From positions 62,001 through 126,000 of the forward strand of contig NIVC01001014.1 of assembly GCA_002269645.1 (NCBI GenBank): a stretch of DNA of 64,000 bases, read 5' to 3'. The stretch is from Macrostomum lignano. Its lineage: Eukaryota. The translations under genes and the position numbers were made by a program. Positions within the stretch are counted from its first letter, which is position 1, and the number at the start of each line of letters is the position of its first letter. Of this stretch, positions 2,659-64,000 are shown one piece after another. Below the pieces are notes generated by a model, which was not told the origin of the DNA, did no database searches, and saw only the letters and a program-made list of their open reading frames with translations.

Positions 2659-5600
2659 TCAAATATAGAAGCTACGCCTCGGATACCGGCCAATCAAATC
2701 GTGCTGATTCAGCAATTTCGCCAGCTGCTGCTCCAGCCGGAGAGCGCAGTTCAATTCCTCGCTATTAGCCGGATTATACTCGGTAGCGTTGCCGAATAGC
2801 AGGGCAAAATCCGACATCAGCTGATCGGCATTGGCGTAGCCGCCGCGTTGCTGTCGCTTGCGCATGTCCAACAGGCACATCGGCTTAGAGACAATCTGAT
2901 AATAGTCGGGCGCATCCTTGGGATCGACAGGATCAACGAATGGCCAGGCGTCTTTGTGCCGATAGATTTTATCTAGCAGAGCTTTGCACAGCCTCTGCTG
3001 CTGCTCCTGCTGATCTGGCGCTAATCTGGCGCGCTTGCCGGGCGGCTGCTTGGCGCCGCCGCTGCTGTAGCGAACGCGCTTGCCGCGAACTTTCTCTTCT
3101 TCAGCCTCTTGTTCCAGTCGTTGGTCTTCGTCTTCACTATCTGCCGCAGTTTTCGAAGATCGTTTCGAAATTTTCTGCTTTGAAGAAGCAGCAGCAGCAG
3201 AAGTGGAAGCAAGCGAATGACGACGATTGCTGACCGCCGGCTGTTGCTTCTTCGAGCCGCGCCGATTGCTTTCGGAAGCAACAGAAGAGGCTGACTTCCT
3301 GCCGCGCTTAGCCGGCGGAGCAGCGGCTCCAGACCTTTTGCTAGCTTTCTGCGTCTTCAAACCGGAAGATGTGGAAGATCGCTGCTTTGACCGCGACTTC
3401 GCCGCGACGGCTTCTTCCTCAGCATCGTCGCTCCCAGACTCCTCTTCTTCATCTTCATCGTCTTGCTGGTCATCAACTTCCATGCCTTCATCGTCGCTGG
3501 AGTTGTCTGGCGCAGCTTCTTCTTCTTCGTCATCATCGTCTTCCTCGTCTTCGAGCTCCTCCTCCTCTTCTGTTTCTTCGTTAGCCTCGTGCTCAACCTC
3601 GTTCTCTTCATCTTCCTCATCGGCAGTCTCCGCCTCTTCTTCCTCATCGTTGTCGAATTCGTCCTCACTGACGGCAGCTTTCTTCGACTGAAACGAAGTT
3701 TAATAGTGGCGTTGATGACAGTTTTATCCGTTTCTATCGCTGCAGAAATCAATGTACTTCTCTCTACCCCCCAATGCAGGAATCAATGTACATTCTCTCC
3801 ACCCCCCAATGCAGGAAGCAATGTACATTCTCTCTACCCCCCAATGCAGGAATAAATGTACATTCTCTCTACCCCCCAATGCAGGAATAAATGTACATTC
3901 TCTCTACCCCCAATGCAGGAATCAATGTACGTTCTCTCTACCCCCCAATGCAGGAACCAATGTACATTCTCCCTATTTCCAATGCAGGAATCAATGTGCA
4001 TTCTCTCTACCCCTAATGTAGGAATAAATGTACATTCTCTCTGACTCCCCACTACAGGAATCAATCTACATTCTCTCTGACTCCCCACTACAGGAATCAA
4101 TCTACATTCTCTCTGACTCCCCACTACAGGAATCAATCTACATTCTCTCTGCCCCCACTGCAGGAACCAATGTACATTCTCTCTACCCCCACTGCAGGAA
4201 TTAATGTACATTCTCTCTACCCCCACTGCAGGAATCAATGTACATTCTCTCTACCCCCCAATGCAGGAATCAATGTACATTCTCTCTACCCCCCAATGCA
4301 AGGAATCAATGTACATTCTCTCTACCCCCACTGCAGGAATTAATGTACATTCTCTCTACCCCCACTACAGGAATCAATGTACATTCTCTCTACCCCCCAA
4401 TGCAGGAATCAATGTACATTCTCTCTACCCCCCAATGCAAGGAATCAATGTACATTCTCTCTACCCTCCAATGCAGGAATCAATGTACATTCTCTCTACC
4501 AGAAAGCAGGAATGAATGTACATTCTCTACCCCTAATGTAGGAATCAATGTACATTCTCTCTGCCTCTTCACTGGAAGCAATTATGTACTCAATCATTAT
4601 CTTGGCAGCCTTCACTTACTCTGCTCTGAGACGACCTTTTTCCATTGACCGCAGCAGATTTCTTAGCAGCTCTTCCAGCGGATCTAGGCCTGCCCCTTTT
4701 GCCGCTGCCACCGTTGCTGCCGGCAGTTTTAGAAACAGATTTACGGTCCTTTCGACAGACGGAACAACGAAATGCCGACCTAGTATTAGACCGCAGCGGC
4801 GGCTCGTGACAGCCTGCATGGTAGTTCGAGCGGCACTGCACGCACTGGATCAGCGGGGCCCCGGCGTGGGCGGAATGATCGCACACCTGACAGCAGGCCC
4901 GCTCGTCGTCGTCAGCTCCTATCCGGTCGTCGTCTTCGTCATTGTCAGCATCGTCGTCGACGTCATCTTCGTCGTAGAAGCCCCTAGATCGACGCTCTCG
5001 CCTACGAGATGTCGAGGACTTTTTGCTACCAGTGGAGCTAGCGGCGCCGGCAGGGGCGCAGGCTAGGCAGTACCAATCCCCGGTTGGCCGCTCAGTCAGG
5101 CGCGGTCGCAAACAGTCGGGATGAAATGCTCGATTACATTTTTCGCATAGCAACAAATTTGGCGGATCGCGTCTAACCCGGCAGACTTGGCATTTGGCAT
5201 TGGCGGTGCTCTTGTCCCAGTTGACGCTGCTGTCTAACACGGACAGTAGGAAGTTTAGGCGGCCCCAGGTGGTGCAAGCAGACACGCTGGCCCGCCACTG
5301 CTCACAGAATTCCGGATCTTTGAACGCGCCGTAGCGGAACCGATCGAGCACGTGTTTTTCAACCTGGAGGTAAATGCGGGTGGAGAATAGGCATCAGATT
5401 AAGTGATGGTCTACAAAAAGAAAACACAGCCAATCAGAGAAGAACAAGATAAGGCAATGGAGCTAGCAGCCAATCAGAGAAGGGCAAGATAAGGCAGTGG
5501 GGCTAGCAGCCAATCAGAGAAGGGCAAGATAAGGCAATGGGGCTAGCAGCCAATCAGAGAAGAACAAGATAAGGCAGTGGGGCTAGCAGCCAGTCAGAGA

Positions 5601-13100: not shown

Positions 13101-14477
13101 CCGGCTCATCTTTGCGATAAATTGTACCTTTGATTCTGGTAAAAACAGAGGAAAATCAAATAATAGGCGATATGTATCGAAAAAACAACTTTCCTAAGCA
13201 CGCAGCAACACACTTTATAGAGACTACAAAAAAACAAAAACTTACATTTTATCGCGAACTTTATTTTTTAGGCAAACCGGCTCGTCTAAGTAAAACTCTT
13301 GATGCAATTTGCGATAGACGCGGTTCACAGCGTTATCGATTGTGTCCGTGCCTGCCGTTTAGAGAGCGGGGTTGCTATTGAACTTAGACCGGCAACTGAG
13401 GATCTGGGAGGCTGGCCCTAGCAACTGAGGATCTGGGAGGCTGGCCCAGCAACTGACACTCTGGGAGGCTGGCCCAGCAACTGAGGATCTGGGAGGCTGG
13501 CCCAGCAACTGAGGATCTGGGAGGCTGGCCCGGCAACTGAGGATCTGGGAGGCTGGCCCAGCAACTGAGGATCTGGGAGGCTGGCCCAGCAACTGTGGAG
13601 GCTGGCTCACTGAGGATCTAGGAGGCTGGCCCTAGCAACTGAGGATCTAGGAGGCTGGCCCTAGCAACTGAGGATCTGGGAGGCTGGCCCAGCAACTGAG
13701 GATCTGGGAGGCTGGCCTAGCAACTGAGGATCTGGAGGCTGGCCCTAGCAACTGAGGATCTGGAGAGCAACTGAGGATCTGGCCAGCAACTGAGGATCTA
13801 GAGGAGGATCTGGCCCAGCAACTGAGGATCTGAGGAGCAACTGAGGATCTGGAGAGCAACTGAGGATCTGGGAGGCTGGCCCAGCAACTGAGGATCTGGA
13901 AGGCTGGCCTAGCAACTGAGGATCTGGGAGGCTGGCCCAGCAACTGAGGATCTGGAAGGCTGGCCTAGCAACTGAGGATCTGGGAGGCTGCATGGCCCTT
14001 TTGGCCCAGCAACTGAGGATCTGGGAGGCTGGCCCAGCAACTGAGGATCTGGTAGACTGGCCCAGCAACTGAGGATCTGGGAGGGCGGGTTTTCTGGCAG
14101 CCAATAAACAAGCCCAACTCACTGTGATGCACAATCTCCAAAGCAGCCTGAACATAGTACTTGGGAAACAGCTTCTTCAACAGTCTCTGGCAGGACTTCT
14201 CAGACTTGACAGCGTCCTTATAACTGAGACAGCTGCGGCCAGTGCAACGGCAAGTCCAAATTGGCTCGGCATAGATTCGATTCTTTCGTTCCAATTCGCC
14301 TGCGCTGCTGCAGATCTCCTGGGTGATGTCCGCCACGAATTCGTGCTGCCGCTGCTGGCCAGACTTAGTTGGAGAGTCCGGAGGTGGAGCAGTGCTGGTC
14401 TGGGCTGTGCTGGGCCGCTTGCGTTCCTTTTTAACCAACTGATTGAGCACGTGCGGCCGCGAACCAAGTAGCGGCAT
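2659..14477 (-). CDS. BAZ1B: BAZ1B/WSTF-like bromodomain-PHD chromatin remodelling subunit (WAC, DDT, WHIM/WSD, 2x PHD, bromodomain)
   Basis: Exons joined by GT-AG with consistent phase (minus strand): 14477-14123, 13351-13246, 13135-12853, 12274-12198, 12102-11715, 11320-10985, 9864-9372, 7833-7229, 6890-6616, 6253-5740, 5363-4620, 3687-2659. A possible extra terminal exon is 1801-1768 via a donor after 2687. WAC motif [22 protein letters not shown]; WSTF-type [35 protein letters not shown]; DDT-like [28 protein letters not shown]; [15 protein letters not shown]; two PHD fingers; bromodomain [23 protein letters not shown]. Confidence 0.9.
3745..4560. repeat. 35-bp minisatellite, BAZ1B intron 11
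   Basis: Unit AATCAATGTACATTCTCTCTACCCCCCAATGCAGG. Confidence 0.95.
5427..5720. repeat. 40-bp minisatellite, BAZ1B intron 10
   Basis: Unit GGCTAGCAGCCAATCAGAGAAGGGCAAGATAAGGCAGTGG, about 8 copies. Confidence 0.95.
6318..6560. repeat. About 19-bp minisatellite, BAZ1B intron 9
   Basis: Unit approximately GGGCGATTCTAGGGGTCTA. Confidence 0.9.
7005..7205. repeat. (GACA)n microsatellite, BAZ1B intron 8
   Basis: Imperfect GACA run. Confidence 0.95.
7925..9298. repeat. 24/27-bp minisatellite with 51-bp higher-order repeat, BAZ1B intron 7
   Basis: Alternating TAACACCTGTTAGAGACAGACTAC and TAACACCTGTTAGACACTGACTACTAT. Confidence 0.95.
10030..10878. repeat. 39-bp shifting to 37-bp minisatellite, BAZ1B intron 6
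   Basis: AACTGGCTATGGGATTCTGATTAGGGATGGGGATAACTA switches at about 10440 to AACTGGCTATGGGATTCTGGTTTAGTGGGGATATCTT. Confidence 0.95.
12440..12830. repeat. 17-18-bp minisatellite, BAZ1B intron 3
   Basis: Unit CAGTCAGTGGGAATCCC(C). Confidence 0.95.
13385..14085 (-). repeat. 28-bp minisatellite, BAZ1B intron 1 (same family as the UROS intron 1 array)
   Basis: Minus-strand unit CCTCCCAGATCCTCAGTTGCTGGGCCAG. Confidence 0.95.
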
Positions 14478-15854: not shown

Positions 15855-16175
15855 GGGGGCTGTAGCCCAGCGGTCTAGCGCAGGCTCTGGTGTGCCAGCA
15901 ACCCAGGCTCAATTCCAAGTGTAGTCACATTAATTTGGGGCTGAATTGGAATCTCGGCTTGGCTCTGCTTGTGCAATTAATGGCCTTGAGAGCCAACCCC
16001 CCAAGACGCAGTGAAGTGTACATGCCTAACGATAAAATAAAGTTAGGGCTGCTGTACACTCCTGTGTGAGTATGTGCCTGCATACGTATCCGCATGCTTG
16101 TATGCCTGCTCAGGGGAGTTGGCAGAATGGGCAGTAATGCCTCTTGCCAGTTGTATGCCTTTGTCATTTAAAGTG
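15855..16175 (+). mobile_element. tRNA-derived SINE, family A, CpG-decayed copy
   Basis: tRNA-like head with A/B-box-like motifs; colinear with the copies at 51002-51330 and 61230-61410 (minus). Confidence 0.8.
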
Positions 16176-16470
16176 CGCCAGGGTATACACAACCCCTTGC
16201 CTCTAATAAAAAAGTATATTCTGCTTCTAAAGCTAGCTGCAGAGTAGGGATCAAAGTGTTATAAAAAACCATTTGCAAATACATTAGGAAATACTACATA
16301 CTGGATACTATAGTCCTATTTTATGACCACAAAGACATCTGCTAGAGATGTTTAGGCTATAAGGCATCAGCTTATTCTCTCCTATCATTATCTTTTTGAC
16401 CTATATATTTATTCTTGTATATTTTTGTAACAATAACTTTTGTATTTGTAGTTTACTTAATAAAAACAAG

Positions 16471-29094: not shown

Positions 29095-31345
29095 ATGTCC
29101 ATGAGAATTATGGACTGTGATGTTATCGGTCTCCAGGAGGTGTCTATCAAGGCTGATCCGGGGCTTCACTGCAAGGATCTGGGCGCCGGATGGATCCTTT
29201 ACTACACATCGGCGGACCAACGAGGCCGTGTAGGAGTTGGAGCGCTGGTCGGACCGAGGCTGCATCAGAGCTGTCGCTGCGTCTCTCTGTCCCCTCGGCT
29301 GCTTCGGGTGGACGTCCGGCTTCGCGGCCGGAACGTTTGCCTGTTCTGCGCGTATGTGTGCCCCTGCCACCCGTCCTTATGAGGTGCTCAAGACTTCTTC
29401 GAGCAGCTTTCGGTACAGGTAGCGCAGCGTGATACAGTGATCATCCTCGGAGACCTGTACAGGGTTTTGCGTAGGTTTGAGCGGTCTCTGTTTGTTACAC
29501 CGCGTGAGAACAGCAACACCGGAGCGCTGGAGGACTTCCTAGAGAGGCAGGACATGGTGTCGGCCAAATACTCTTTTCCGCAAGCCGCCGGGCAGGCTCG
29601 TAACGTGTTGTGGGCTGCAAGTGCAGGCGGCGAAATGCGCGTGGACGGAAGGCAACACAGGCACAGCTCGATCACGTGCTGGTGCGCTTCCGAGAGCGCC
29701 GCCGCGTCATCAATTGGGCCGCGCCATCATGTCGCTGGCTCTGCGGTCCGATTATCGGTTCCTCTTCTGCGACCTTCGTCTTCGCGATCCGCTCTACCGT
29801 CCGCTGAAGTGGCCATCGCGGCGCTACTACCATGCGCTAAGGGACTCCGACACGAACAGCCGCTTTGCCAGCGCTTTCATAACTGCGCTCGGCGGCAAGC
29901 GTGGAGGTACCGAGTACGCGGAGGTGTGTGCTACAGTTCGAGCCGCCGCGGAACAAGCAGTCCCGCTGATGCGACCGGCCCAGCGGAGGCAGTCGGTATG
30001 GCAAGACAACCCTGCGATTCGGCAAGCGAGGTAAGAGCTAGAGAGGTTTCGTTTGAGCTGGCGACCAACCCGCGGGCAGAGGAGGCCTTGGCGGCTGTCT
30101 ATCTGCAGCGCCAGCAGGCTGCTGTTGATGACGCCATTCGGGCCGTCTCCGCCACTGAGCCTGTGGCCTGGTCGGCGGCTATCAACGCTCTGACAGGGTG
30201 AAATCGGCGCATTCGTCTAAACCTGGCAGGCGACTCTGCGGACAAGCACAGGAACGAGCTGCGTGAGTTCTTCGCCGCTATTGTCAACGCGCCGCCACCC
30301 CCGCTGCCAGACATTCTGACGCTGCCGCCGGAGATACCGCTGCCGGCAGAGGTGAGTTTCAGCCTAGAACCAGTCAGCACAGCCGACGTTGTGAGGCTCG
30401 CCCAACAGTTACCGGCGGGAATGCGCTGGGTCCGGACGAGGTGCCCATCGAGGCGCTGCGCATTCACTGTGTGGCCGGTGAGGTCGCCAGAGTGATGAAT
30501 CGCGTGCTCTTCGGTGAGGAGGCACCCAACGAATGAACCACGGTGCACATCGTTGCATTTTCTAAGATGCCGGGCACCACATGGTATGAAAAGCATCGAG
30601 GTATCTGCCTTCAGACCTGCCCTGTTCAACCGGATGCTGCTATCTTGGTTTCAGCCCGTGTTGGATCCGTACCTGCGCCAGAGCAGCTGATTTCCGCCAT
30701 CATGGCGATGTACTGCGATACGAAAGCTGCTGTTTCAAAACCTGACGGCCTATCGGACTTCTTTGAGACATCCTTTGGGGTGTTTCAGGGAGATACGCTT
30801 GCGCCGTTCCTGTTCGTTTTGGTGCTTGACTGGGTGCTGCGGACCGCTCTTCCTACCAACGACGACGGCTTTCTGCTGTTGCGGCGACGCGTGGGTCGAC
30901 GTCAACCGGAGAGGCGTCTCAGCGTGCTTGGCTACGCTAACGATCTCGTTCTGCTGTCCTCAACTGTCGAGGGCGCACAGCGACAACTGGACAAGCTAGT
31001 TGCTGTTGCGGCGAGTGTCGGCCTGGTGGTCAACACGCAGAAAACCGTCGTGCTCTGCGTGCCGGACGACATTGGGGCTGCGATTTTGTGCCCAGGCGCT
31101 GACGGAGCCTCCGCGTTGTCAGCAGTTCGTCTACCTCGGCGGTCTGGTTCCCGGCGTCCGCGAGGATCTGCGGCGTCGCCGCGGGCTTGCCTGGGCTGCC
31201 TTTTGTTCTGTGAGAGCGGTCCTGCAGTACGAGGCCTTACCTGACCGCCAGAGGGCGGCGCTGTTCCAGGCGGTGATCGAGACCGTCCTGTTGTATAGTA
31301 CAACGCCGAGCCCTGGACGCTAACGGAGTCGCTCGAGCAACAAGA
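29095..31345 (+). mobile_element. Degenerate APE-type non-LTR retrotransposon (endonuclease + RT; RTE-like)
   Basis: DVIGLQEV, IILGD and AQLDHVLVR (APE); GVFQGDTLAPFLFVLVLDWVLR and LSVLGYANDLVLLS (RT); CQQFVYLGG. Multiple frameshifts and stops. Confidence 0.9.
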
Positions 31346-48732: not shown

Positions 48733-51694
48733 AGGTTATTAACAAACTACTGTTCAGGCTTATTGAAGTTATTGCTCTTGTCTGCCTAAATAGATAGGTA
48801 AAACTACAAAATAGAAGTTTCCATTGTCACAGTTGATGTCTATGAATGCCATGGAATGGCCCTTTCCATCTCAGTGGCCAAACAAGCTAAGTGTTTACAA
48901 GCTAAATGGGAAAAGACTGAGACATCCATAATGGTATTGGCTTAGTCTCGCCTATATATACTTAACTCAAAAGCCAAACTCTGCTTAACGGAGTTAAGCC
49001 ATGACAGCGTGCACTTGACAAGCTACATTGGAATTAATTCGCTTACGTTTGGATCTCCCAATGAACTGGGAAATATATAAGCCAGAATTATCGTTCAACT
49101 TTATAATATTTTCACATTCAAAGAAATTGTTGTTAAACTAATTGCTAGATTGATGAACTGCATAATTTGTGTAGCTTTTGTTTTCGAACTTTGATACATG
49201 CGAATAATCGTCAAAAAGTTGGACTAAAAAACCGCTAAACTGCGAATATTTCAGTATCAAATTTTTCACTCACTGACTTAATGTTGGCTGGCAAACGTCG
49301 GCAGGCAAACGTCGCTATCCCCCCAAGACGTCAGGATCACGAACATGTGGGCGACCTATCCTAGGCTGTCCTTCCATCTTGAAGCTAGTAGTATTCATGG
49401 ATAAATTCGCTGAGATTCAGTAGATAGATTCAGTGAGATTCAGTAGATAGATTCACTGAGATTCAGTAGACAGATTCAGTGAGATTCAGTAGATAGATTC
49501 AATGAGATTCAGTAGATAGATTCAGTGAGATTCAGTAGATAGATTCACTGAGATTCAGTAGATAGATTCACTGAGATTCAGTAGATAGATTCACTGAGAT
49601 TCAGTAGATAGATTCACTGAGATTCAGTAGATAGATTCACTGAGATTCAGTAGATAGATTCACTGAGATTCAGTAGATACGAGCGTAGATTCAGTGAGAT
49701 TCAGTAGATAGATTCACTGAGATTCAGTAGATAGATTCACTGAGATTCAGTAGATAGATTCACTGAGATTCAGTAGATAGATTCAGTGAGATTCAGTAGA
49801 TAGATTCACTGAGATTCAGTAGATAAATTCAGTGAGATTCAGATAGATAGATTCTCTGAGATTCAGATAGATAGATCCAGTGAGATTCAGATAGATAGAT
49901 TCACTGAGATTCAGTAGATAGATTCAGGGAGGTTCAGTGAGATCCTTGAGATTTACTGACGTTCAGTGAGATTCAATGAGAGTTAGTGAGATTCTGTGGG
50001 GCTCAGTGAGATTCAGTGGGGCTGAGTGAGATTCAGTGGGGCTGAGTGAGATTCAGTGAGATTCTGTGGGGCTCAGTGAGATTCAGTGGGGCTGAGTGAG
50101 ATTCAGTGAAATTCTGTGGGGCTCAGTGAGATTCAGTGGGGCTGAGTGAGATTCAGTGAGATTCAGTGGGGCTGAGTGAGATTCAGTGAGATTCAGTGGG
50201 GCTGAGTGAGATTCAGTGGGGCTGAGTGAGATTCTGTGGGGCTGAGTGAGATTCAGTGAAATTCTGTGGGGCTCAGTGAGATTCAGTGGGGCTGAGTGAG
50301 ATTCAGTGAGATTCAGTGGGGCTGAGTGAGATTCAGTGAGATTCAGTGGGGCTGAGTGAGATTCAGTGAGATTCAGTGGGGCTGAGTGAGATTCAGTGGG
50401 GCTGAGTGAGATTCAGTGGGGCTGAGTGAGATTCTGTGGGGCTGAGTGAGATTCTGTGGGGCTCAGTGAGATTCTGTGGGGCTGAGTGAGATTCAGTGGG
50501 GCTCAGTGAGATTCAGTGGGGCTGAGTGAGATTCAGTGAGGCTCAGTGAGATTCAGTGGGGCTGAGTGAGATTCAGTGAGATTCAGTAGAATCTGTCATA
50601 CGGCCAATTGCTAGGCTGTCCTTCCGTGCGGCTTCAATTTAGTCGCACGCAGAAGTGATATTAATTAAGCTAATTAGTCAAATTCCCTCACCTCCTTGCT
50701 AAAGACTGAGAGACAGAGCGAGTATACAGGGGCAACGAAACCTTCGCGATTTAATATAAAAGAAAAAACGAAGCTACGGTTGTCTAATTGCATGTAGGTC
50801 TGTTAATTAAAGCCTCTAAAACTGACTGACTGACTTCTTTTACTTTGCTAATTGTAACGAGCATTGCTTTCGAGTTGCATAACGGATTTAAAAAATTAAA
50901 GAGGAGAAAAAAAGAGAGTAGACATCTAAGAGCATCATTTTTATTTAGTATATAAGACTGCAGGTCTGAGTCATAAGTTTTCGATCTTATAATGCTGTCT
51001 AGGGCCGTAGCTCAGCGGTCTAGCGTAGCGCTCTGATGTGCCAGCGGCCCAGGCTCGATTCCTAATTCTGCAGTCAAATTCATTTGGGGCTAAATTGGAA
51101 TCTCGGCTTGGCTCTGCTCGTGCAATTAACGCCCTTGAGGCCCAACCATTAAGGCACAGTGAAGTGTACATGCCTAACGATAATATAAAGTTAGGGCCGC
51201 TGTACACTCCTGTGCGAGTGTGTGCCTGTGCGTATGACTGCGTACGTATCCGCGTGCTTGTATGCCTGCTCAGGAGAGTCGGCGTTTGTGTGACAAGATT
51301 GCACAGGATGCTCATAGCCTCTTGCTTCGAATTAAATAAAGGCCTTCCTACCTCTCCTTGGCAGCCCTACCGTCTGCTGCCCTACTTCGAGCCCGTATTT
51401 GTAGACGGAGTCGGCAAATGCGGCATCCGATTCGATTCGGATCGGAATCTGGCCAGGTTGAGCAGCCCGGTGCCCGTGCTGATCATTCACGCCCAGGACG
51501 ATCGGGTGGTGCCCATAGAGCTGGGCAGACAGCTCAGAGACTATCTGAACACGGCACGGGGTGGCGCCGATATTAGCGCCGTTCGTTTCTTAGAATTGCC
51601 GGCCAACAAAGGCTACAAGCACACCAGGGCGGTGGATGCGCCAGAGGTTTACGTTGAATTTCAGCGTCTAATTGAAACCACTCGAGGTTTATAG
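46279..51694 (+). CDS. ABHD12: ABHD12-like alpha/beta hydrolase; contains an in-frame TGA (possible null allele or pseudogene)
   Basis: Exons 46279-46432, 46684-46980, 47113-47242, 48081-48204, 51365-51694. TM segment IYVIVPLIVYLYPGILTSVVFFN; LLYYHGNALNRGG; DYRGYGDS; nucleophile WGHSLGTG; LVLESPFNNI; LIIHAQDDRVVP; GYKH. TGA at 46797-46799. Confidence 0.9.
46455..46620. repeat. 23-bp minisatellite, ABHD12 intron 1
   Basis: Unit CATGAGAATCAGTTTGATCCCA(T/C). Confidence 0.9.
47300..47915. repeat. About 19-bp imperfect minisatellite, ABHD12 intron 3
   Basis: Unit approximately AAAACACGCCCACCACCCC. Confidence 0.9.
48301..49314. mobile_element. TIR element carrying a (CTA)n microsatellite (48455-48732), ABHD12 intron 4
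   Basis: CGACGTTTGCCAGCCGACGTTTGCCAGCC at 48319 and its inverted copy ending at 49314; flanked by GCTAT(C4/C6)AAGACG direct repeats at 48286-48300 and 49314-49330. Confidence 0.6.
49415..50590. repeat. Compound 23-bp and 10/20-bp minisatellite, ABHD12 intron 4
   Basis: TGAGATTCAGTAGATAGATTCAC followed by TGAGATTCAGTGGGGCTGAG variants; flanked by the 15-bp direct repeat CTAGGCTGTCCTTCC. Confidence 0.95.
51002..51330 (+). mobile_element. tRNA-derived SINE, family A (best preserved copy)
   Basis: GGGCCGTAGCTCAGCGGTCTAGCG..GGCTCGATTCC head; colinear with 15855-16175. Confidence 0.8.
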
Positions 51695-57796: not shown

Positions 57797-60127
57797 GCTG
57801 TGCAGTCGAACTTCTCAACCTCCGAGTTCGAACCCGCCGTCCTCAGTCCGCACGAGTTCCTACCGTGCAAACGCAACGACAGCGACGAAACTTCCCGTGA
57901 TGTCGTTGGCGACTCCTCAGAGGAGGATTCAAATCTAGCAGTCATTTTCACCAGCAAACGGGCCGTGCAGTTCTTTTCCGCTGTCTGCCGCAGCCCACGC
58001 CGCCTCTGCTACGCTGTGGGCCCTGCCACCGCCCAGGCTGCCGCCAGCGTTGCCGGCTTCGTAGAAGTTCGCGGCGGAGCCGCCTGCGGCAATGCTGACG
58101 CTCTGTGCGACTTGGTTGAGGCTGGTTGGTGCTGGACCTCAGTTGCTGGGCCAGCCTCCCAGATCCTCAGTTGCTGTGCCAGCCTCCCATATCCTCAGTT
58201 GCTGGGCCAGCCTCCCAGATCCTCAGTTGATGGGCCAGCCTCCCAGATCCTCAGTTGCTGGGCCAGCCTCCCATATCCTCAGTTGCTGGGCCAGCCTCCC
58301 AGATCCTCAGTTGATGGGCCAGCCTCCCAGATCCTCAGTTGCTGGGCCAGCCTCCCAAATCCTCAGTTGCTGGGCCAGCCTCCCAGATCCTCAGTTGCTG
58401 GGCCAGCCTCCCAGATCCTCAGTTGCTGGGCCAGCCTCCCAGATCCTCAGTCGCTGGGCCAGCCTCCCAGATCCTCAGTTGCTGGGCCAGCCTCCCAGAG
58501 TGTCAGTTGCTGGGCCAGCCTCCCAGAGTGTCAGTTGCTGGGCCAGCCTCCCAGATCCTCAGTTGCTGGGCCAGCCTCCCAGATCCTCAGTTGCTGGGCC
58601 AGCCTCCCAGATCCTCAGTCGCTGGGCCAGCCTCCCAGATCCTCAGTTGCTGGGCCAGCCTCCCAGAGTGTCAGTTGCTGGGCCAGCCTCCCAAATCCTC
58701 AGTTGCTGGGCCAGCCTCCCAGAGTGTCAGTTGCTGGGCCAGCCTCCCAGATCCTCAGTTGCTGGGCCAGCCTCCCAGATCCTCAGTTGCTGGGCCAGCC
58801 TCCCAGATCCCCAGTTGCTGGGCCAGCCTCCCAGAGTGTCAGTTGCTGGGCCAGCCTCCCAGAGTGTCAGTTGCTGGGCCAGCCTCCCAGATCCTCAGTT
58901 GCTGGGCCAGCCTCCCAGATCCTCAGTTGCTGGGCCAGCCTCCCAGATCCTCAGTTGCTGGGCCAGCCTCCCAGATCCCCAGTTGCTGGGCCAGCCTCCC
59001 AGAGTGTCAGTTGCTGGGCCAGCCTCCCAGAGTGTCAGTTGCTGGGCCAGCCTCCCAGATCCTCAGTTGCTGGGCCAGCCTCCCAGATCCTCAGTCGCTG
59101 GGCCAGCCTCCCAGAGTGTCAGTTGCTGGGCCAGCCTCCCAGAGTGTCAGTTGCTGGGCCAGCCTCCCAGAGTGTCAGTTGCTGGGCCAGCCTCCCAGAT
59201 CCTCAGTTGCTGGGCCAGCCTCCCAGATCCTCAGTCGCTGGGCCAGCCTCCCAGAGTGTCAGTTGCTGGGCCAGCCTCCCAGAGTGTCAGTTGCTGGGCC
59301 AGCCTCCCAGAGTGTCAGTTGCTGGGCCAGCCTCCCAGAGTGTCAGTTGCTGGGCCAGCCTCCCAGAGTGTCAGTTGCTGGGCCAGCCTCCCAGATCCTC
59401 AGTCGCTGGCCCAGCCTCCCAGAGTGTCAGTTGCTGGGCCAGCCTCCCAGAGTGTCAGTTGCTGGGCCAGCCTCCCAAATCCTCAGTTGCTGGGCCAGCC
59501 TCCCAGAACTAAATCGTGGGTAATTTTGTGCCCATAAACCCAATCAAAGCAGTATGAATAAAGTGCAATCTTTGCAGAGCTGCAACCTGAGGTTCACAAG
59601 CTGCTGTTTCCATGCGGCAGGGTGCGCAAGAGCACGGTGGAGACCCGTCTGGCCAGCTTCCGCCTCACAGTGATGGAGCTTTACGATGCTGTGGAGAAGA
59701 AAGATTTGGGCCGAGAAATCCAGCAAATTGTAAGTGCATTGAAACGCTTGACACTTGTTTTATAATTTGTCGGGGTTATTTTTACAAATGGGGTTTTGCT
59801 ACACCTGTTGAATTGATTCAGGAGCCGCAGCACAAGCAGCTTGTCTTGGCCTTCTTCAGCCCTAGTTCGGTTTCCATGGTGATGAAGCACCTGTACACGA
59901 GCTGTTACGATGATGTAAAGGTAACGAGTAACAATAATGAATATCCGTTTTCAAGCTGTAAAATTCTTAGAAACTATCAGCTCAAATTTCGATCGTTTTA
60001 GCTAATCTCGATTGGTCCGTCAACCAGTCACCGACTCAAGGAGTTGCTGCCGCACAATCAGTGTTTCGAATGTCGAACACCTTCTGTTGATGCATTTTTA
60101 CATGCTCTGCGTCTTTGTCGTCAGTAG
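57797..60127 (+). CDS. UROS: Uroporphyrinogen-III synthase (HemD-like); no genomic start codon found
   Basis: Exons 57797-58124, 59578-59729, 59822-59920, 60002-60127 in consistent phase. VIFTSKRAV, YAVGPAT, CGNADAL, LLFPCG, FFSPS and ISIGPST match UROS motifs. Confidence 0.9.
58135..59508 (+). repeat. 28-bp minisatellite, UROS intron 1, about 49 copies
   Basis: Unit CCTCCCAG(ATCC/AGTG)TCAGTTGCTGGGCCAG. Confidence 0.97.
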
Positions 60128-60250: not shown

Positions 60251-60615
60251 GGGGCTGTAGCCTAGTGGTCAGAGCGTCGGAATCACGACTGAAAGGTCAC
60301 GGGTTCGATTCTCGACACACTTGAAGCTATTTGTGTCCTTGAGCAAGACTATGGACTTCTGCGGTATAAATTTAACATCGAACTGGTGCTGGCGCCCCTG
60401 GTTCTGGCACCCCTGGTGCTAAATCCCCTGGTGCTAAAGCCCCTGGTGCTAAAGCCCCTGGTGCTAAAGCCCCTGGTGCTAAAGCCCCTGGTGCTAAAGC
60501 CCCAGTACCACCAAAATAGTTTGAATGGTTCTATTATTTGGTAAATTTATATTTTAGAAGTCCCTGGTAAGAAAGACACCCCAACTCTGCATTGCTTCAG
60601 TTCACCCAGCTGGGG
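60251..60615 (+). mobile_element. SINE family B copy interrupted by a small TIR element (about 60354-60561) that carries a 15-bp tandem array
   Basis: Head GGGGCTGTAGCCTAGTGGTCAGAGCGTCGG..GGTTCGATTC; CORE-like TGTGTCCTTGAGCAAGAC resumes near 60573. Insert ends GGACTTCT..TATAAATTTA / TAAATTTATA..AGAAGTCC. Confidence 0.65.
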
Positions 60616-60912
60616 TAATTGATTGAGGGTTCAGATGCTGTTAAAATTACTAAATATTAATATTGTTTGTAAACATTATCCACGCCACTGAAAATACTGC
60701 ATACGAGAAAAACGTCTTGAACATTTAGGATGGTAAATAAATCCTCTCTTACAAATGACCGTCAGTAATATAATTATGTTTTTATTTGATGCTTTTCAAG
60801 CATTGCAATTGGCAATATAGAAAGTTAAGCCATTGTTTCTGTTGCAATAACTATAGGTAACTAAGGTCACGTTAGCTGCGTAGAACATGCATCAGCCGCT
60901 AGGACGTCATCT

Positions 60913-61589
60913 TCAACCCCGCCAGGCATTCTCAGCCGGGGTCCCATAACAGGACGCCGGATGCATGAAGAAGTTCCGGCAGAGTTTCGAGCGTTTCATT
61001 GCCTGTCGAAGCTCCTGACTCTTCCAGTTGGCGCTGATGCCGGCAGGAATAGGTGGCGAATTTCTCCGATACTTCGCATAGGCCCGAGCAGGAGCCGGTA
61101 TGAACTGGAACTCGATGAAATTTGAAGTAGCAAACATTGAAGTCACTACTGATTAAACTATAATAAGAGCGACAAACGTGGAAAACTAAAGTAGAAGGAC
61201 GCACTTTTAGCGACATTGTCACACAACCAGCGAGAGGCATTGCTGCCCATTCCGCCGACTCCCCCTGAGCAGGCACACAAGCGCGCGGATGCGTACGCAG
61301 TCATACGCACAGGCATATGGCGTCAGGCATGTACCTATGTTGTCTTGGGGGTTGGCCCTCGAGGACGTTAATTGCACGAGCCGAGCCAAGCTTCTACCGA
61401 TCTTTCTATCTTCCCATTGTCGCTGTTGTGCCTCATACTTATTTGGCAGTGCTATAAAGGGTTGTTGTACGAGTAATACGGACTTACGATGCCGAACTTG
61501 CGATCTTCGGGCAGCGCCAGAGCTTCTTGGGCAGCCACCGCCAAGAGTCCAAGAGCAACCAGCACAAGTAGAGCAAATCTGCAACTCAT
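60913..61589 (-). CDS. Putative neuropeptide precursor, 97 aa (somatostatin/allatostatin-C-like Cys loop)
   Basis: Exons 61589-61488 (donor GTAAGT) and 61104-60913 (acceptor TTCCAG), phase 0: MSCRFALLVLVALGLLAVAAQEALALPEDRKFGI|FIPAPARAYAKYRRNSPPIPAGISANWKSQELRQAMKRSKLCRNFFMHPASCYGTPAENAWRG*. Hydrophobic signal peptide, RK/RR/KR sites, terminal Gly. Confidence 0.8.
61230..61410 (-). mobile_element. SINE family A, partial copy in the intron of the prepropeptide gene
   Basis: Reverse complement matches 51100-51290 and 15950-16150. Confidence 0.75.
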
Positions 61590-62904
61590 AATTCCTTTGA
61601 GAGTCTGGTTGCGCCGGAGAATGAGTCGCTGTGAACAAGTCATTTTTAGGGCAGAAGATTTGCCAATTTTTATAGATTTGAAAGATCAAAGGCGTCGGAC
61701 CGCCCACGGAACTGCTGGGCCTCTGCTGTTTGCGGATTCCGATAAACTGGATTATTTTTCAGTTTTTTTGGAAACCTTCAAAAAATTCCTGACAATTCGT
61801 AACACAATGCTTTTGCGCAAATATGGAAGCAAAATTTCGGATCGGATGAAGATGAAATGCCCGTTTTGTTACATTGCATGCAGGATCTTTTGCTACAATA
61901 TCGATTTTTTTATTCTGAGAGATTTGTCCAGGCTCAATTGATGATGGATTGGGTTGCTTGCGCAGAACCGTCTTTTGCGGGCTTGTAGCTAAGGTTAAGC
62001 AAGGGTTCTGGGCGCTGTCCCAACCAGCTAGGAGGCAAAGAAGTCATGTCCTGTCGCTTATCCATATGCCTCTTGAGCAGGCACTCGCTCACACAGGGTT
62101 TACAGCGGCTCTGCCTTTCTAATCGTCAGGGCATGTACACTGTCGTGGCCCTCGTGAGCGAGAATCACATTTAAATACGAGCTCCATGGGTAGGCCAATA
62201 TTCTTGTACTCAAAATGGCTTGTTTCTTCACTTTATCTCTCGAGAAACTTCTGCAATCAGAGTTTGTAATGTATACCTACCGTCCTAATTAGTCACTGAT
62301 CTCATAATCTCGGATCGCAGGTTAAACACAGAAGCTGTTCACCAACACTTCCTACTAATAGTAGCATTTAATGTCCTTATGTACGATAGCGATCCTCGTG
62401 TAGCGATAAGAGTGGAGAGACAGACCCAAGAGCTGAGTAAAGAGTGGAGAGGCTGATTCAAGAGCTGAGTAAGGAGCGGAGAGTCATCCGAGAGCTGAGC
62501 AGGATTCAAATTTTGGTAGAAAAATTAGAACCATAAAGGGCATATTGCAAATTCGCAGTCAGACAGAATGCTCAGACTTCACACACTAAGCCTAAGGCTA
62601 TAGACGTTCTCAGACTCTTGAATAGAATTGCTTGTCAGATTCGCCAACCTAAACTGTCCTGGGAAACAAAAACAATGAGGATGGCAAGACCATAAAGATA
62701 TTCCTTAGGAGATGGAGACCCGCCGCTCCCCGTGAAATTCATTGAATTTTTTTAAGTTTCGAGTTTTAAATTAAAAACCTCACTGCAGACGGTAGTGTTT
62801 TACCCAATTACTCAAGAAGACAGACTGCCAAGGTTTACTGAGGGAAATGCTGTGTCTCATGAGGGAATTTTTGAGATTAATGTGCAGGGGAATCGATTAG
62901 ATAT

Positions 62905-64000
62905 AACAACAAAGCCCGTCCCGTTGGCAGTGTCGGGCGCCCCAGCGTCGCGTAGCAGGCAGTCCACGTATCGACGGGTTTGAGCCTGACCCCGCCTGAA
63001 CGGGCCCTGCAAGGTGAGCAGCAAAAGTCCTGAGCAGGTTGGGGGTAGGAGTTCTCGGCCCGGATTATGTGGCCCGCCAGTTGAAGACGCCGCCGGCGCA
63101 GGATGGTGGACGGGCGCTGTTGGCCCGATCGTACAGGGCCTCGGTCCCGACGCTCTCGTCAGCTCGAAAGGCCGCACGGAGCAGCCCTGAGTGCGCCGAG
63201 TGCAGCTGCCGCTCTAGCCTAGCCGTCAGCGTCCACTCTCAGCGTTGTAGAGCAGGACGGATCTACCACCGCCTGCAACAGCCGAGCCCTCTGGCGGTCG
63301 GGCAGCGCTTCGGACTGGAGGACGGCTCGGATCGAACGGAAGGCCGCCCAGGCAAGTCCTCTGCGCCGCCGGAGGTCTTCCTCCACGTGAGACACCAGAC
63401 CGCCGAGGTAGGTGAACCGCTGGCAGCGTGCGAGCCTGGTCGTCTGCCCGTCTGCGCCGCGGCACGTCAGGTCCGTTGGGATGTCGGCCGGCACAGTCAG
63501 CACCTCGGTCTTCAGCGTGTTGACAACCAGACCGACGCTCGATGCCACCTCGACGGGCCTGTCGATCTGGCGCTTGGCGCCTTCAACGGACGAGGAGAGG
63601 AGGGCGAGGTCGTCGGCGTAGCCAAGCACACTCAGGCGCTCAGATGCGTCTGCGCAGCAGGAAGCCGTCGTCAGAGGAGGGGAGTGCGGTCCGAAGCACC
63701 CAGTCCAGCAGCAGCACGAAGAGGAACGGCGCCAGCGTGTTGCCCTGCAGAACTCTTGATGAAGTGTCGAACAGACCACACAAACCGTTCGCCGTCACCA
63801 CAGCAGCTTGAGTATCGCAAGTCTCAGAGCAGGAGTTGGTGGTCTGACCGGAGAGTCAGCGGAGCCATGGTGTCGCAGTTGGTGACGCGGCGGCGCTCGC
63901 GAGCGCGAATCAGCGCATGATCGAGTTGCGCCAGTCTCCTAGTGGCGTTCCGCCCGCGTGCGTTCCGTCAGCTTCTCTTGCAGCCCGAAAAGGTAGCCAG
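62905..64000 (-). mobile_element. Degenerate non-LTR retrotransposon (RT and 3' end), related to the 29095-31345 element; continues beyond the window
   Basis: RLSVLGYADDLALLSSSVEGAKRQ..VGLVVNTLKT..CQRFTYLGG..DLRRRRGLAWAAF. Confidence 0.9.

What the first reader, a model, noticed from the sequence alone, without database searches (positions are those of the whole stretch)
60913..61589. Candidate neuropeptide precursor bridging somatostatin and allatostatin-C motifs
Splicing two short exons that are not joined in the ORF track gives a 97-aa protein with a signal peptide and dibasic sites (RK, RR, KR). The C-terminal peptide is SKLCRNFFMHPASCYGTPAENAWR-G, with an amidation Gly. The loop C-RNFFMHPAS-C begins like somatostatin (CKNFFWKTFTSC) and ends like allatostatin C (C..NPISCF), families regarded as orthologous. 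It lacks the FWKT pharmacophore, has a 9-residue loop and carries an unusual amidated tail. A second peptide FGIFIPAPARAYAKY is predicted. This could be an undescribed flatworm SST/AstC-type signalling system; family assignment is inference from motif similarity.
Basis: partly seen in the sequence, partly recalled or inferred. Interest (0 to 1): 0.8.

Follow-up and report, generated by a model that had tools for sequence, protein, structure and literature searches.

The report
Orphan cysteine-loop prohormone gene, Macrostomum
This is a real-looking two-exon gene of the flatworm Macrostomum lignano that encodes a small secreted, hormone-precursor-like protein ending in a disulphide-loop peptide, but the proposed kinship with somatostatin or allatostatin-C rests on a short motif resemblance that fails those families' defining features.

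Summary
On the minus strand, exon 1 (61589..61488) joins exon 2 (61104..60913) through a canonical GTAAGT...TTCCAG phase-0 intron. The product is the stated 97-aa protein, with a hydrophobic signal peptide, RK/RR/KR sites and a C-terminal CRNFFMHPASC loop peptide ending in Gly. The organism is Macrostomum lignano. UniProt already holds this spliced model (A0A1I8IT71, with an 18-aa N-terminal extension) and a 97%-identical paralogue (A0A1I8H222), both named "Uncharacterized protein".

[quoted passage not shown] The defining peptide features fail:
- There is no WK motif.
- The loop has 9 residues, against 6 in every protostome AstC.
- There is no FxP motif.
- A 10-residue tail follows the second Cys.

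The loop matches annelid elevenin (L11) better than somatostatin in pairwise tests. It still fails the elevenin profile, loop length, Arg and position in the precursor. The dibasic count is no higher than composition predicts.

No homologue outside M. lignano was detectable, but a control showed the search cannot see neuropeptides across phyla.

Best reading: an orphan, possibly lineage-specific, amidated disulphide-loop neuropeptide precursor. Expression, processing and receptor are all untested.

The parts
61669..61674 (-). TATAAA box
   Evidence: Pattern position. It lies 31 nt upstream of the ATG at 61643 and 85 nt upstream of the ATG at 61589. A promoter role is inferred only.
61590..61643 (-). 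In-frame upstream extension (MTCSQRLILRRNQTLKGI), used as the start in UniProt A0A1I8IT71
   Evidence: The ATG at 61643 sits about where a TATA-directed transcription start would fall, so it is probably not used (inference).
61515..61589 (-). Start codon and predicted signal peptide MSCRFALLVLVALGLLAVAAQEALA (residues 1-25)
   Evidence: Kyte-Doolittle mean of about 3.0 over residues 5-19, and an A-x-A motif before Leu26. AF2 models a helix at residues 3-25. No SignalP was available, so this is heuristic.
61488..61589 (-). Coding exon 1 (34 codons)
61105..61487 (-). Intron: 383 nt, phase 0, GTAAGT...TTCCAG
   Evidence: The same junction is used in both UniProt models.
61200..61391 (.). Dispersed-repeat fragment inside the intron
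   Evidence: blastn matches at 51106-51284 and 16065-16177, 80-92% identity
60913..61104 (-). Coding exon 2 (63 codons plus TGA)
61069..61496 (-). Predicted fragment FGIFIPAPARAYAKY, between RK (61497-61502) and RR (61063-61068); split by the intron
   Evidence: This is the only proregion segment that differs in the paralogue (FGIFIHPAPAWAYAKY), so it may be a spacer.
60997..61062 (-). Predicted fragment NSPPIPAGISANWKSQELRQAM, between RR and KR
60991..60996 (-). KR dibasic site in front of the loop peptide
60916..60990 (-). C-terminal peptide SKLCRNFFMHPASCYGTPAENAWR plus Gly (amidation donor)
   Evidence: Identical in the paralogue.
60949..60981 (-). Cys76...Cys86 loop CRNFFMHPASC (9 residues between the cysteines)
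   Evidence: The disulphide is inferred.
60781..60786 (-). AATAAA polyadenylation signal, about 130 nt after the stop codon
   Evidence: Function inferred.

Best explanation
This is a small, stand-alone, two-exon gene of Macrostomum lignano that encodes a preproprotein of 97 aa (115 aa if the upstream ATG is used). The protein most likely enters the secretory pathway and is processed like a neuropeptide or peptide-hormone precursor.

Proposed steps, all inferred:
1. The signal peptide is removed after Ala25.
2. Prohormone convertases cut at RK30-31, RR47-48 and KR71-72.
3. Carboxypeptidase trims the basic residues.
4. The C-terminal Gly97 is converted to an amide.
5. Cys76 and Cys86 form a disulphide.

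The product would be a 24-residue cyclic peptide, SKLC(RNFFMHPAS)CYGTPAENAWR-NH2, which presumably acts on a G-protein-coupled receptor.

In layout the gene works like an SST/AstC-type precursor. By sequence it cannot be placed in the SST, AstC or elevenin families. It is best treated as an orphan, possibly Macrostomum- or flatworm-specific, disulphide-loop neuropeptide candidate.

What the sequence shows directly: the open reading frame, the splice signals, the hydrophobic N-terminus, the basic pairs, the two cysteines and the terminal glycine. Transcription, secretion, cleavage, amidation, the disulphide, neuronal expression and the receptor are all inferred.
For: - Gene structure and canonical splice sites. 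The identical junction appears in two UniProt models from two loci of M. lignano.
- The only indel between the paralogues is in frame, and the C-terminal peptide, both Cys, all basic pairs and the terminal Gly are identical.
- The N-terminus is strongly hydrophobic with an AxA cleavage motif, and AF2 models it as a helix at residues 3-25.
- The rest of the protein has no confident fold (mean pLDDT 62, pTM 0.38) and no Pfam domain. This fits a processed precursor rather than a folded domain.
- TATAAA and AATAAA bracket the unit.
- SST/AstC-like orphan GPCRs are annotated at BLAST level in planarians and schistosomes (PMC3022928). No SST/AstC or elevenin ligand is reported for flatworms in the papers I could read.
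Against: - There is no direct transcript or peptide evidence. Exact-protein look-ups found no assembled contig.
- The dibasic count is what composition predicts (3 observed, 2.2 expected, P = 0.37).
- The only relatives found are same-species copies, so conservation of the loop is untested. The 97% identity of the paralogues may only reflect a recent duplication.
- The signal peptide call is heuristic.
- AF2 used a 3-sequence alignment, so low confidence says little.
- The window is very repeat-rich. That raises the prior for spurious small gene models, although the two exons themselves are unique in the window.
Confidence: 0.55

Rival explanations
1. It is the flatworm orthologue of the somatostatin/allatostatin-C superfamily. 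On this view it is a divergent SS- or ASTC-type peptide that acts on the SST/AstC-like GPCRs of flatworms.
For: [quoted passage not shown]
- CRNFF matches CKNFF of SST-14/cortistatin, and HPASCY resembles arthropod NPISCF. Pairwise scores are 29-31, with uncorrected permutation p = 0.007-0.013.
- Asn is present in the loop, which is common in ASTC.
- Echinoderm ASTC-type (SS1) peptides show that long loops of 10 residues can occur in this family.
- Flatworms have BLAST-annotated somatostatin/allatostatin-like receptors without a known ligand.
Against: - There is no WK motif, which is shared by all SSRP and SSRP-like peptides.
- The loop is 9 residues, whereas protostome ASTC always has 6 and protostome SSRP-like peptides have 4.
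- The motif is FxxP, not FxP.
- Lophotrochozoan ASTC has V/L/I, not P, at that position (Platynereis CLVNIVSCW), and the candidate does not resemble it (score 16, p = 0.2).
- In the Manduca AstC alignment only the second Cys aligns.
- A 10-residue amidated tail follows the loop, which is unlike either family.
- Pfam gives no match and BLASTP finds none against the Platynereis AstC precursor.
- The p-values do not survive correction for 13 comparisons.
Confidence: 0.13
2. It is a divergent elevenin (L11)-type neuropeptide that has moved to the C-terminus of its precursor.
For: - The best pairwise match of all peptides tested is to Platynereis elevenin: CRNFFMHPASCYGTPA against CTRFVFHP-SCRGVAA. 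That is 8 identities in 16 positions, score 39, z = 5.3, p about 6e-4, or about 0.008 after correction.
- F at +3, H at +6 and P at +7 from the first Cys are in register.
- The Gly two residues after the second Cys, invariant in elevenins and the most important residue in the Aplysia alanine scan, is present.
Against: - All 31 elevenins collected have an 8-residue loop and C[RL]G. The candidate has 9 residues and CYG.
- The conserved Asp before the first Cys is absent (Leu in the candidate).
- A profile HMM of the family gives 0.4 bits, and 637 of 3000 Cys-fixed shuffles score as well.
- Elevenin lies directly after the signal peptide and is not amidated. Here the peptide is C-terminal and ends in Gly.
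- The Conus elevenin gene has two phase-2 introns. This gene has one phase-0 intron.
- BLASTP of the precursors shows no match in the peptide region.
Confidence: 0.1
3. It is a lineage-specific small secreted protein that is not a neuropeptide. Examples would be a gland, seminal-fluid or antimicrobial product. On this view the basic pairs and the terminal Gly are incidental.
For: - The dibasic count is at the chance level.
- No homologue was found outside the species.
- From general knowledge, M. lignano is reported to express many orphan, small, signal-peptide-bearing tissue-specific transcripts.
- There are no expression data.
Against: - The KR sits just three residues in front of the first cysteine of the only Cys pair.
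- The C-terminal Gly directly precedes the stop codon.
- No fold is predicted.
- The C-terminal peptide is perfectly conserved between the paralogues, while the two proregion changes fall in the first predicted fragment, FGIFIPAPARAYAKY. With only three differences in total, this is weak evidence.
Confidence: 0.17
4. It is not a functional gene. On this view it is a chance ORF pair, or a decaying gene model, in repeat-rich DNA.
For: - The window is dominated by minisatellites and retroelement fragments.
- The exons are short.
- No transcript evidence could be retrieved.
Against: - Start codon, signal peptide, canonical donor and acceptor in the matching phase, stop codon, TATA and poly(A) signals are all in the right order within 900 bp.
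- A second locus keeps the whole frame, with an in-frame indel.
- Both exons are unique in the window.
Confidence: 0.05

Closest known systems
Somatostatin / cortistatin (chordate SS-type; SSRP family)
   Same: The disulphide-loop peptide lies at the extreme C-terminus of a precursor of about 100 aa, behind a dibasic site. [quoted passage not shown] The loop starts C-[KR]-N-F-F and ends S-C.
   Different: There is no (F/I)WK pharmacophore. The loop is 9 residues, not 10-15 (or 4 in UII and protostome SSRP-like peptides). A 10-residue amidated tail follows the second Cys. Pfam finds no match, including to its somatostatin family.
Allatostatin-C (protostome ASTC-type)
   Same: The position in the precursor is C-terminal. 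The intron is phase 0. Asn occurs in the loop. The ending P-x-S-C-aromatic resembles arthropod NPISCF.
   Different: The loop is 9 residues, against an invariant 6 in protostomes. The motif is FxxP instead of FxP. Lophotrochozoan ASTC (for example Platynereis QPVQCLVNIVSCW) lacks the Pro and does not resemble the candidate. The candidate has a long amidated tail. There is no precursor-level similarity.
Elevenin (L11), e.g. Platynereis PDCTRFVFHPSCRGVAA and Aplysia RPRIDCTRFVFAPACRGVSA
   Same: This gives the highest pairwise similarity. The shared pattern is C-x2-F-x2-H-P-(x)-S-C-x-G-x2-A, with the invariant Gly two residues after the second Cys. It is a single disulphide loop of similar size.
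   Different: The loop is 9 residues, not the invariant 8. Tyr replaces the 93%-conserved Arg. There is no Asp before the first Cys. The peptide is at the C-terminus rather than directly after the signal peptide. It carries an amidation signal. The intron pattern is different. The family HMM does not recognise it.
UniProt A0A1I8IT71 and A0A1I8H222 (Macrostomum lignano, 'Uncharacterized protein')
   Same: A0A1I8IT71 is this gene, with identical sequence and splice junction. A0A1I8H222 is a 97%-identical copy at another locus.
   Different: A0A1I8IT71 starts 18 codons further upstream. Neither entry carries any functional annotation, and neither accession nor the peptide strings occur in the main text of any paper in the searched library; supplementary files were not covered.

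Membership tests
Somatostatin-type / SSRP-like | WK motif (FWK, IWK, VWK or LWK) inside the cysteine loop | tested here: not met
   The loop is RNFFMHPAS, with no Trp and no Lys. The criterion comes from PMC9048919 and PMC8851493.
Somatostatin-type / SSRP-like | Loop size of 10-15 residues (SS/CST, echinoderm SS2) or 4 residues (UII/URP, protostome SSRP-like) | tested here: not met
   There are 9 residues between the cysteines. Criterion.
Somatostatin-type / SSRP-like | [quoted passage not shown] | tested here: met
   KR71-72 precedes the peptide and the stop codon follows Gly97. The intron lies between codons 34 and 35, phase 0. Criterion. These features are shared by several families and are not discriminating.
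Somatostatin-type / SSRP-like | Recognised by Pfam's somatostatin profile | tested here: not met
   hmmscan against Pfam-A at E <= 10 returned 0 families.
Somatostatin-type / SSRP-like | Activates an SSTR-clade GPCR | not testable with these tools
   This needs receptor cloning and a pharmacological assay. Flatworm SST/AstC-like receptors are annotated only at BLAST level.
Allatostatin-C type | Six-residue cysteine loop in protostomes | tested here: not met
   The loop has 9 residues. [quoted passage not shown] The Platynereis loop is CLVNIVSC.
Allatostatin-C type | FxP motif (arthropods, nematodes, echinoderm SS1) or Fx[A/V/L/I] (ASTCC, lophotrochozoans), with Asn in the loop | tested here: inconclusive
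   Asn78 is present. However, the spacing is F80-M-H-P83 (FxxP), and Asn precedes the Phe residues instead of lying between Phe and Pro.
Allatostatin-C type | Peptide ends one residue after the second Cys | tested here: not met
   Ten residues (YGTPAENAWR) plus Gly follow Cys86, with no basic pair between them. The criterion is my reading of the examples in hand, not a stated rule. It rests on Platynereis ...SCW-KRK and, from memory, Manduca/Drosophila ...SCF.
Allatostatin-C type | Precursor-level similarity to a lophotrochozoan ASTC precursor | tested here: not met
   BLASTP against the Platynereis allatostatin-C precursor gave no alignment at E <= 100.
Elevenin (L11) | Eight-residue loop followed by [R/L]-G | tested here: not met
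   All 31 collected elevenins have an 8-residue loop followed by RG or LG. The candidate has a 9-residue loop followed by YG. Only the Gly is kept.
Elevenin (L11) | Recognised by a profile of the family | tested here: not met
   An HMM built from 31 elevenins scores the candidate at 0.4 bits, and 21% of Cys-fixed shuffles score at least as well. The good pairwise score is specific to Platynereis L11.
Elevenin (L11) | Peptide placed directly after the signal peptide, not amidated | tested here: not met
   The candidate peptide occupies residues 73-96 of 97 and ends in Gly followed by the stop codon. Elevenin layout.
Neuropeptide / peptide-hormone precursor (generic) | N-terminal signal peptide | tested here: met
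   Hydrophobic core at residues 5-20, an AxA motif, and a basic n-region. This is heuristic because no SignalP was available.
Neuropeptide / peptide-hormone precursor (generic) | Basic cleavage sites flanking the peptides, more often than chance | tested here: inconclusive
   RK, RR and KR are present and sensibly placed. Three sites is no more than composition predicts (P = 0.37).
Neuropeptide / peptide-hormone precursor (generic) | Conservation of the mature peptide in other species | not testable with these tools
   Only same-species copies were found. The control with the Platynereis L11 precursor retrieved only itself and one close relative, so a negative result carries no information.
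Neuropeptide / peptide-hormone precursor (generic) | Expression in peptidergic neurons or endocrine cells, and detection of the processed peptide | not testable with these tools
   No expression or peptidomic resource for M. lignano was reachable.

The most novel reading that the evidence does not exclude
The peptide is the long-missing ligand of the flatworm SST/AstC-like GPCRs. On this reading it is a divergent, long-loop, C-terminally extended and amidated member of the SS/ASTC superfamily. It would retain the N-terminal half of the somatostatin loop (C-K/R-N-F-F) and the C-terminal half of the arthropod AstC loop (P-x-S-C-aromatic). That would bear on the current dispute over whether SS and ASTC are orthologues or ancient paralogues.
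Probability: 0.12. Interest if true: 0.7.

Novelty: new member of a known kind. Interest (0 to 1): 0.38.

Why it matters
Flatworm neuropeptide repertoires are incompletely catalogued (review PMC13551398). No somatostatin-, allatostatin-C- or elevenin-type ligand is reported for the phylum in the literature I could reach. Somatostatin/allatostatin-like receptors are nevertheless annotated in planarians and schistosomes.

A confirmed cyclic amidated peptide from Macrostomum, a transgenic and RNAi-tractable flatworm, would give a testable ligand for deorphanising those receptors. If it activated an SST/AstC-clade receptor, it would add a spiralian data point to the unresolved SS-versus-ASTC history (PMC8851493, PMC9048919).

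If it is instead a lineage-specific orphan, it is one more entry in a flatworm neuropeptide catalogue. That would be useful but ordinary.

Tried and rejected
- **Exact-protein look-up of contigs or transcripts.** I tried both UniProt models and nothing was on record.
- **Homology searches.** A word-indexed search of 5.8 billion proteins and full phmmer of the exon-2 product against 1.84 billion representatives found only the same-species paralogue. One search also returned a spurious repetitive protein, P0003.
- **Control for search sensitivity.** The genuine Platynereis L11 precursor finds only itself and one close relative. These searches therefore cannot test cross-phylum neuropeptide homology, and I left the third search unused.
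- **PDB sequence search.** It gave only chance hits at E of about 1 to the yeast RAP1 Myb domain, which happens to share R.FF.H.A...ENAWR. This shows how cheaply such short matches arise.
- **Other Cys-loop families.** I compared the peptide with urotensin II, MCH, CCAP, CCHamide, excitatory peptide/GGNG, vasopressin and AstCC. None scored above the shuffles.
- **Literature.** No paper's main text contains the peptide strings or the accessions. McVeigh 2009 and Koziol 2016, the two flatworm neuropeptide catalogues, are not held, so I cannot exclude that the gene is listed there under an npp number.
- **Supplements.** Those of PMC6425005, PMC8851493 and PMC10396302 gave no flatworm AstC or L11 sequences.
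- **Structure and RNA scans.** AF2 gave no confident fold, so I did no fold search. Rfam and tRNA scans of the window were empty.

Full report
**1. What is there**

The reverse strand of 60,900-61,700 reads as a compact eukaryotic gene.
- A TATAAA box lies at 61674-61669.
- There are two in-frame ATGs, at 61643 and 61589.
- Exon 1 ends at 61488 and is followed by GTAAGT.
- The intron is 383 nt and ends in TTCCAG at 61105.
- Exon 2 runs from 61104 to the TGA at 60915-60913.
- An AATAAA lies at 60786-60781.
- Exon 1 counted from 61589 is exactly 34 codons, so the intron is phase 0.

If the intron is retained, the frame closes after 45 residues.

**2. Whose gene it is**

A search of 5.8 billion proteins returned one cluster, from Macrostomum lignano. 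It has two members.
- A0A1I8IT71 (115 aa) is identical to the window's gene, with the same splice junction, but starts at the upstream ATG.
- A0A1I8H222 (98 aa) is 97% identical. It differs by L8V, an inserted His after FGIFI, and R41W.

Both are named "Uncharacterized protein". The gene model is therefore already public. What is new is only the functional reading.

The upstream ATG lies 31 nt after the first T of the TATA box. That is about where transcription should begin, so I consider the 97-aa form more likely (inference). Either way the hydrophobic core is the same.

**3. Is it a prohormone?**

Points in favour:
- The N-terminus is a textbook signal sequence. It has a basic n-region, a 16-residue hydrophobic core with a Kyte-Doolittle mean of about 3, and A-L-A before Leu26.
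- The remainder has no Pfam domain and no confidently predicted fold (mean pLDDT 62, pTM 0.38).
- A KR pair sits three residues in front of the first of only two mature-region cysteines.
- The protein ends in Arg-Gly-stop, the classical amidation signal.
- In the paralogue, all three differences fall outside the C-terminal peptide.

Cautions:
- The proregion is 18% Lys+Arg, so three dibasic pairs is what shuffling gives (mean 2.2, P = 0.37).
- The paralogues are too similar for their identity to prove constraint.
- I could retrieve no transcript, expression or peptidomic evidence.

I put the chance that this is a neuropeptide or peptide-hormone precursor of some family at about three in four. 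About 0.55 of that is an orphan outside the named families, and the rest is split between SS/ASTC-type and elevenin-type. All processing steps are inferred.

**4. Which family?**

Koch et al. 2022 (PMC9048919) state:
- All SSRP and SSRP-like peptides share a WK motif and a loop of 4 residues (UII, protostomes) or 10-15 residues (SS/CST, echinoderm SS2).
- Protostome ASTC loops "always" have six residues, usually with an Asn and often an FxP motif.

Zhang et al. 2022 (PMC8851493) add that lophotrochozoan ASTCs carry V/L/I in place of the Pro. Both papers treat SS and ASTC as distinct or paralogous families, so the "regarded as orthologous" premise is dated.

The candidate meets the layout criteria: a C-terminal peptide behind KR and a phase-0 proregion intron. 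It fails the peptide criteria:
- There is no Trp-Lys.
- The loop has nine residues.
- The motif is FxxP.
- A ten-residue tail follows the second Cys.

It does not resemble the Platynereis ASTC peptide QPVQCLVNIVSCW, which is the phylogenetically relevant comparison. There the score is 16, p = 0.2, and BLASTP finds nothing between the precursors.

**5.

The loop aligns better with elevenin (L11). The alignment is candidate CRNFFMHPASCYGTPA against Platynereis CTRFVFHP-SCRGVAA (sequence from the supplement of PMC3890597).

I ran a permutation test that keeps the cysteines fixed. The results were:

| Reference peptide | Score | z | p |
|---|---|---|---|
| Platynereis L11 | 39 | 5.3 | about 6e-4 |
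| SST-14 / cortistatin | 30-31 | 3.1 | about 0.012 |
| Manduca AstC | 29 | 3.4 | about 0.007 |

In the Manduca AstC alignment only the second Cys aligns. After correction for 13 reference peptides, only the L11 match survives.

The match does not generalise to the family.
- All 31 elevenins listed in the supplement of PMC10175484 have an 8-residue loop followed by RG or LG.
- A profile built from them scores the candidate at 0.4 bits, which 21% of shuffles equal or beat.
- Elevenin lies directly behind the signal peptide, is not amidated, and in Conus its gene has two phase-2 introns.

Membership in the elevenin family therefore fails as well.

The lesson is that a 9-residue loop rich in F, H and P can be made to resemble several cysteine-loop families. 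The PDB search even found R.FF.H.A...ENAWR in yeast RAP1.

**6. Limits of the homology evidence**

Full phmmer against 1.84 billion representative proteins found nothing outside M. lignano except a repetitive false positive. As a control, the genuine Platynereis L11 precursor retrieved only itself and one close relative. These searches cannot see neuropeptide families across phyla. "No homologue" must not be read as "lineage-specific".

The two dedicated flatworm neuropeptide catalogues (McVeigh 2009, Koziol 2016) were not available to me.

**7. Surroundings**

The window is typical repeat-rich M. lignano DNA, with about 50 minisatellite rows.
- Downstream of the gene lie a 15-bp array (60383-60503) and a 49-copy 28-bp array (58137-59507). 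The 28-bp array interrupts what looks like a uroporphyrinogen-III synthase gene on the plus strand: a HEM4 exon at about 57930-58120 scores 31.3 bits, above the Pfam cut-off.
- Upstream lies a reverse-transcriptase fragment with a YADD motif (63219-63779, minus strand).
- The intron of the candidate carries a fragment of a dispersed repeat.
- Both coding exons are unique in the window.
- No RNA genes were found.

Nothing suggests that the two exons belong to a larger gene.

**8. Verdict**

- The prohormone reading is plausible.
- Assignment to SST/AstC is not supported by the families' own criteria, and the motif resemblance is not specific to them.

The most defensible description is an orphan, amidated, disulphide-loop neuropeptide candidate of Macrostomum lignano whose precursor is built like SS/ASTC-type precursors.

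The more exciting reading is that it is the ligand of the flatworm SST/AstC-like receptors. My evidence does not exclude that reading, and I give it roughly one chance in eight.

Noticed in passing
window 57930-58120 (+), continuing into 58137-59507: An exon-like ORF segment matches Pfam HEM4 (uroporphyrinogen-III synthase) at 31.3 bits, above the gathering cut-off. It runs straight into a 49-copy 28-bp minisatellite that stays open in all three plus-strand frames. The array is presumably intronic.
   Followed up: partly
window 58137-59507 and 13392-14084: The same 28-bp minisatellite unit (CCTCAGTTGCTGGGCCAGCCTCCCAGAT) occurs as two arrays in opposite orientation, 44 kb apart.
   Followed up: no
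window 63219-63779 (-) and 30543-31244 (+): Two GC-rich reverse-transcriptase (RVT_1) fragments, presumably from a retrotransposon. One carries a YADD motif and lies about 1.6 kb upstream of the candidate gene, on the same strand.
   Followed up: partly
window 2659-3483 (-) and 4590-5351 (-): Exon-sized ORFs with strong Bromodomain (2.9e-21) and PHD-finger (2.6e-19) matches. They probably belong to one chromatin-reader gene on the minus strand, separated by 35-bp and 43-bp minisatellites.
   Followed up: no
window 61200-61391, 51106-51284, 16065-16177: A short dispersed repeat (80-92% identity) has one copy inside the intron of the candidate gene.
   Followed up: no
window 60383-60503: A 15-bp tandem array (CCCCTGGTGCTAAAG, about 6-7 copies) lies about 280 bp beyond the candidate gene's poly(A) signal. 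It produces the PLVLK-repeat ORF seen in the ORF list.
   Followed up: no
whole window: About 50 tandem-repeat rows with periods of 12-153 bp cover a large share of the 64 kb. No tRNA or Rfam family was detected.
   Followed up: partly
PDB chains 4gfb_A, 3ukg_A (yeast RAP1) versus candidate residues 59-96: This is a chance alignment, R.FF.H.A......ENAWR, at E of about 1. It is a useful reminder that the C-terminal tail motif has no demonstrated meaning.
   Followed up: yes
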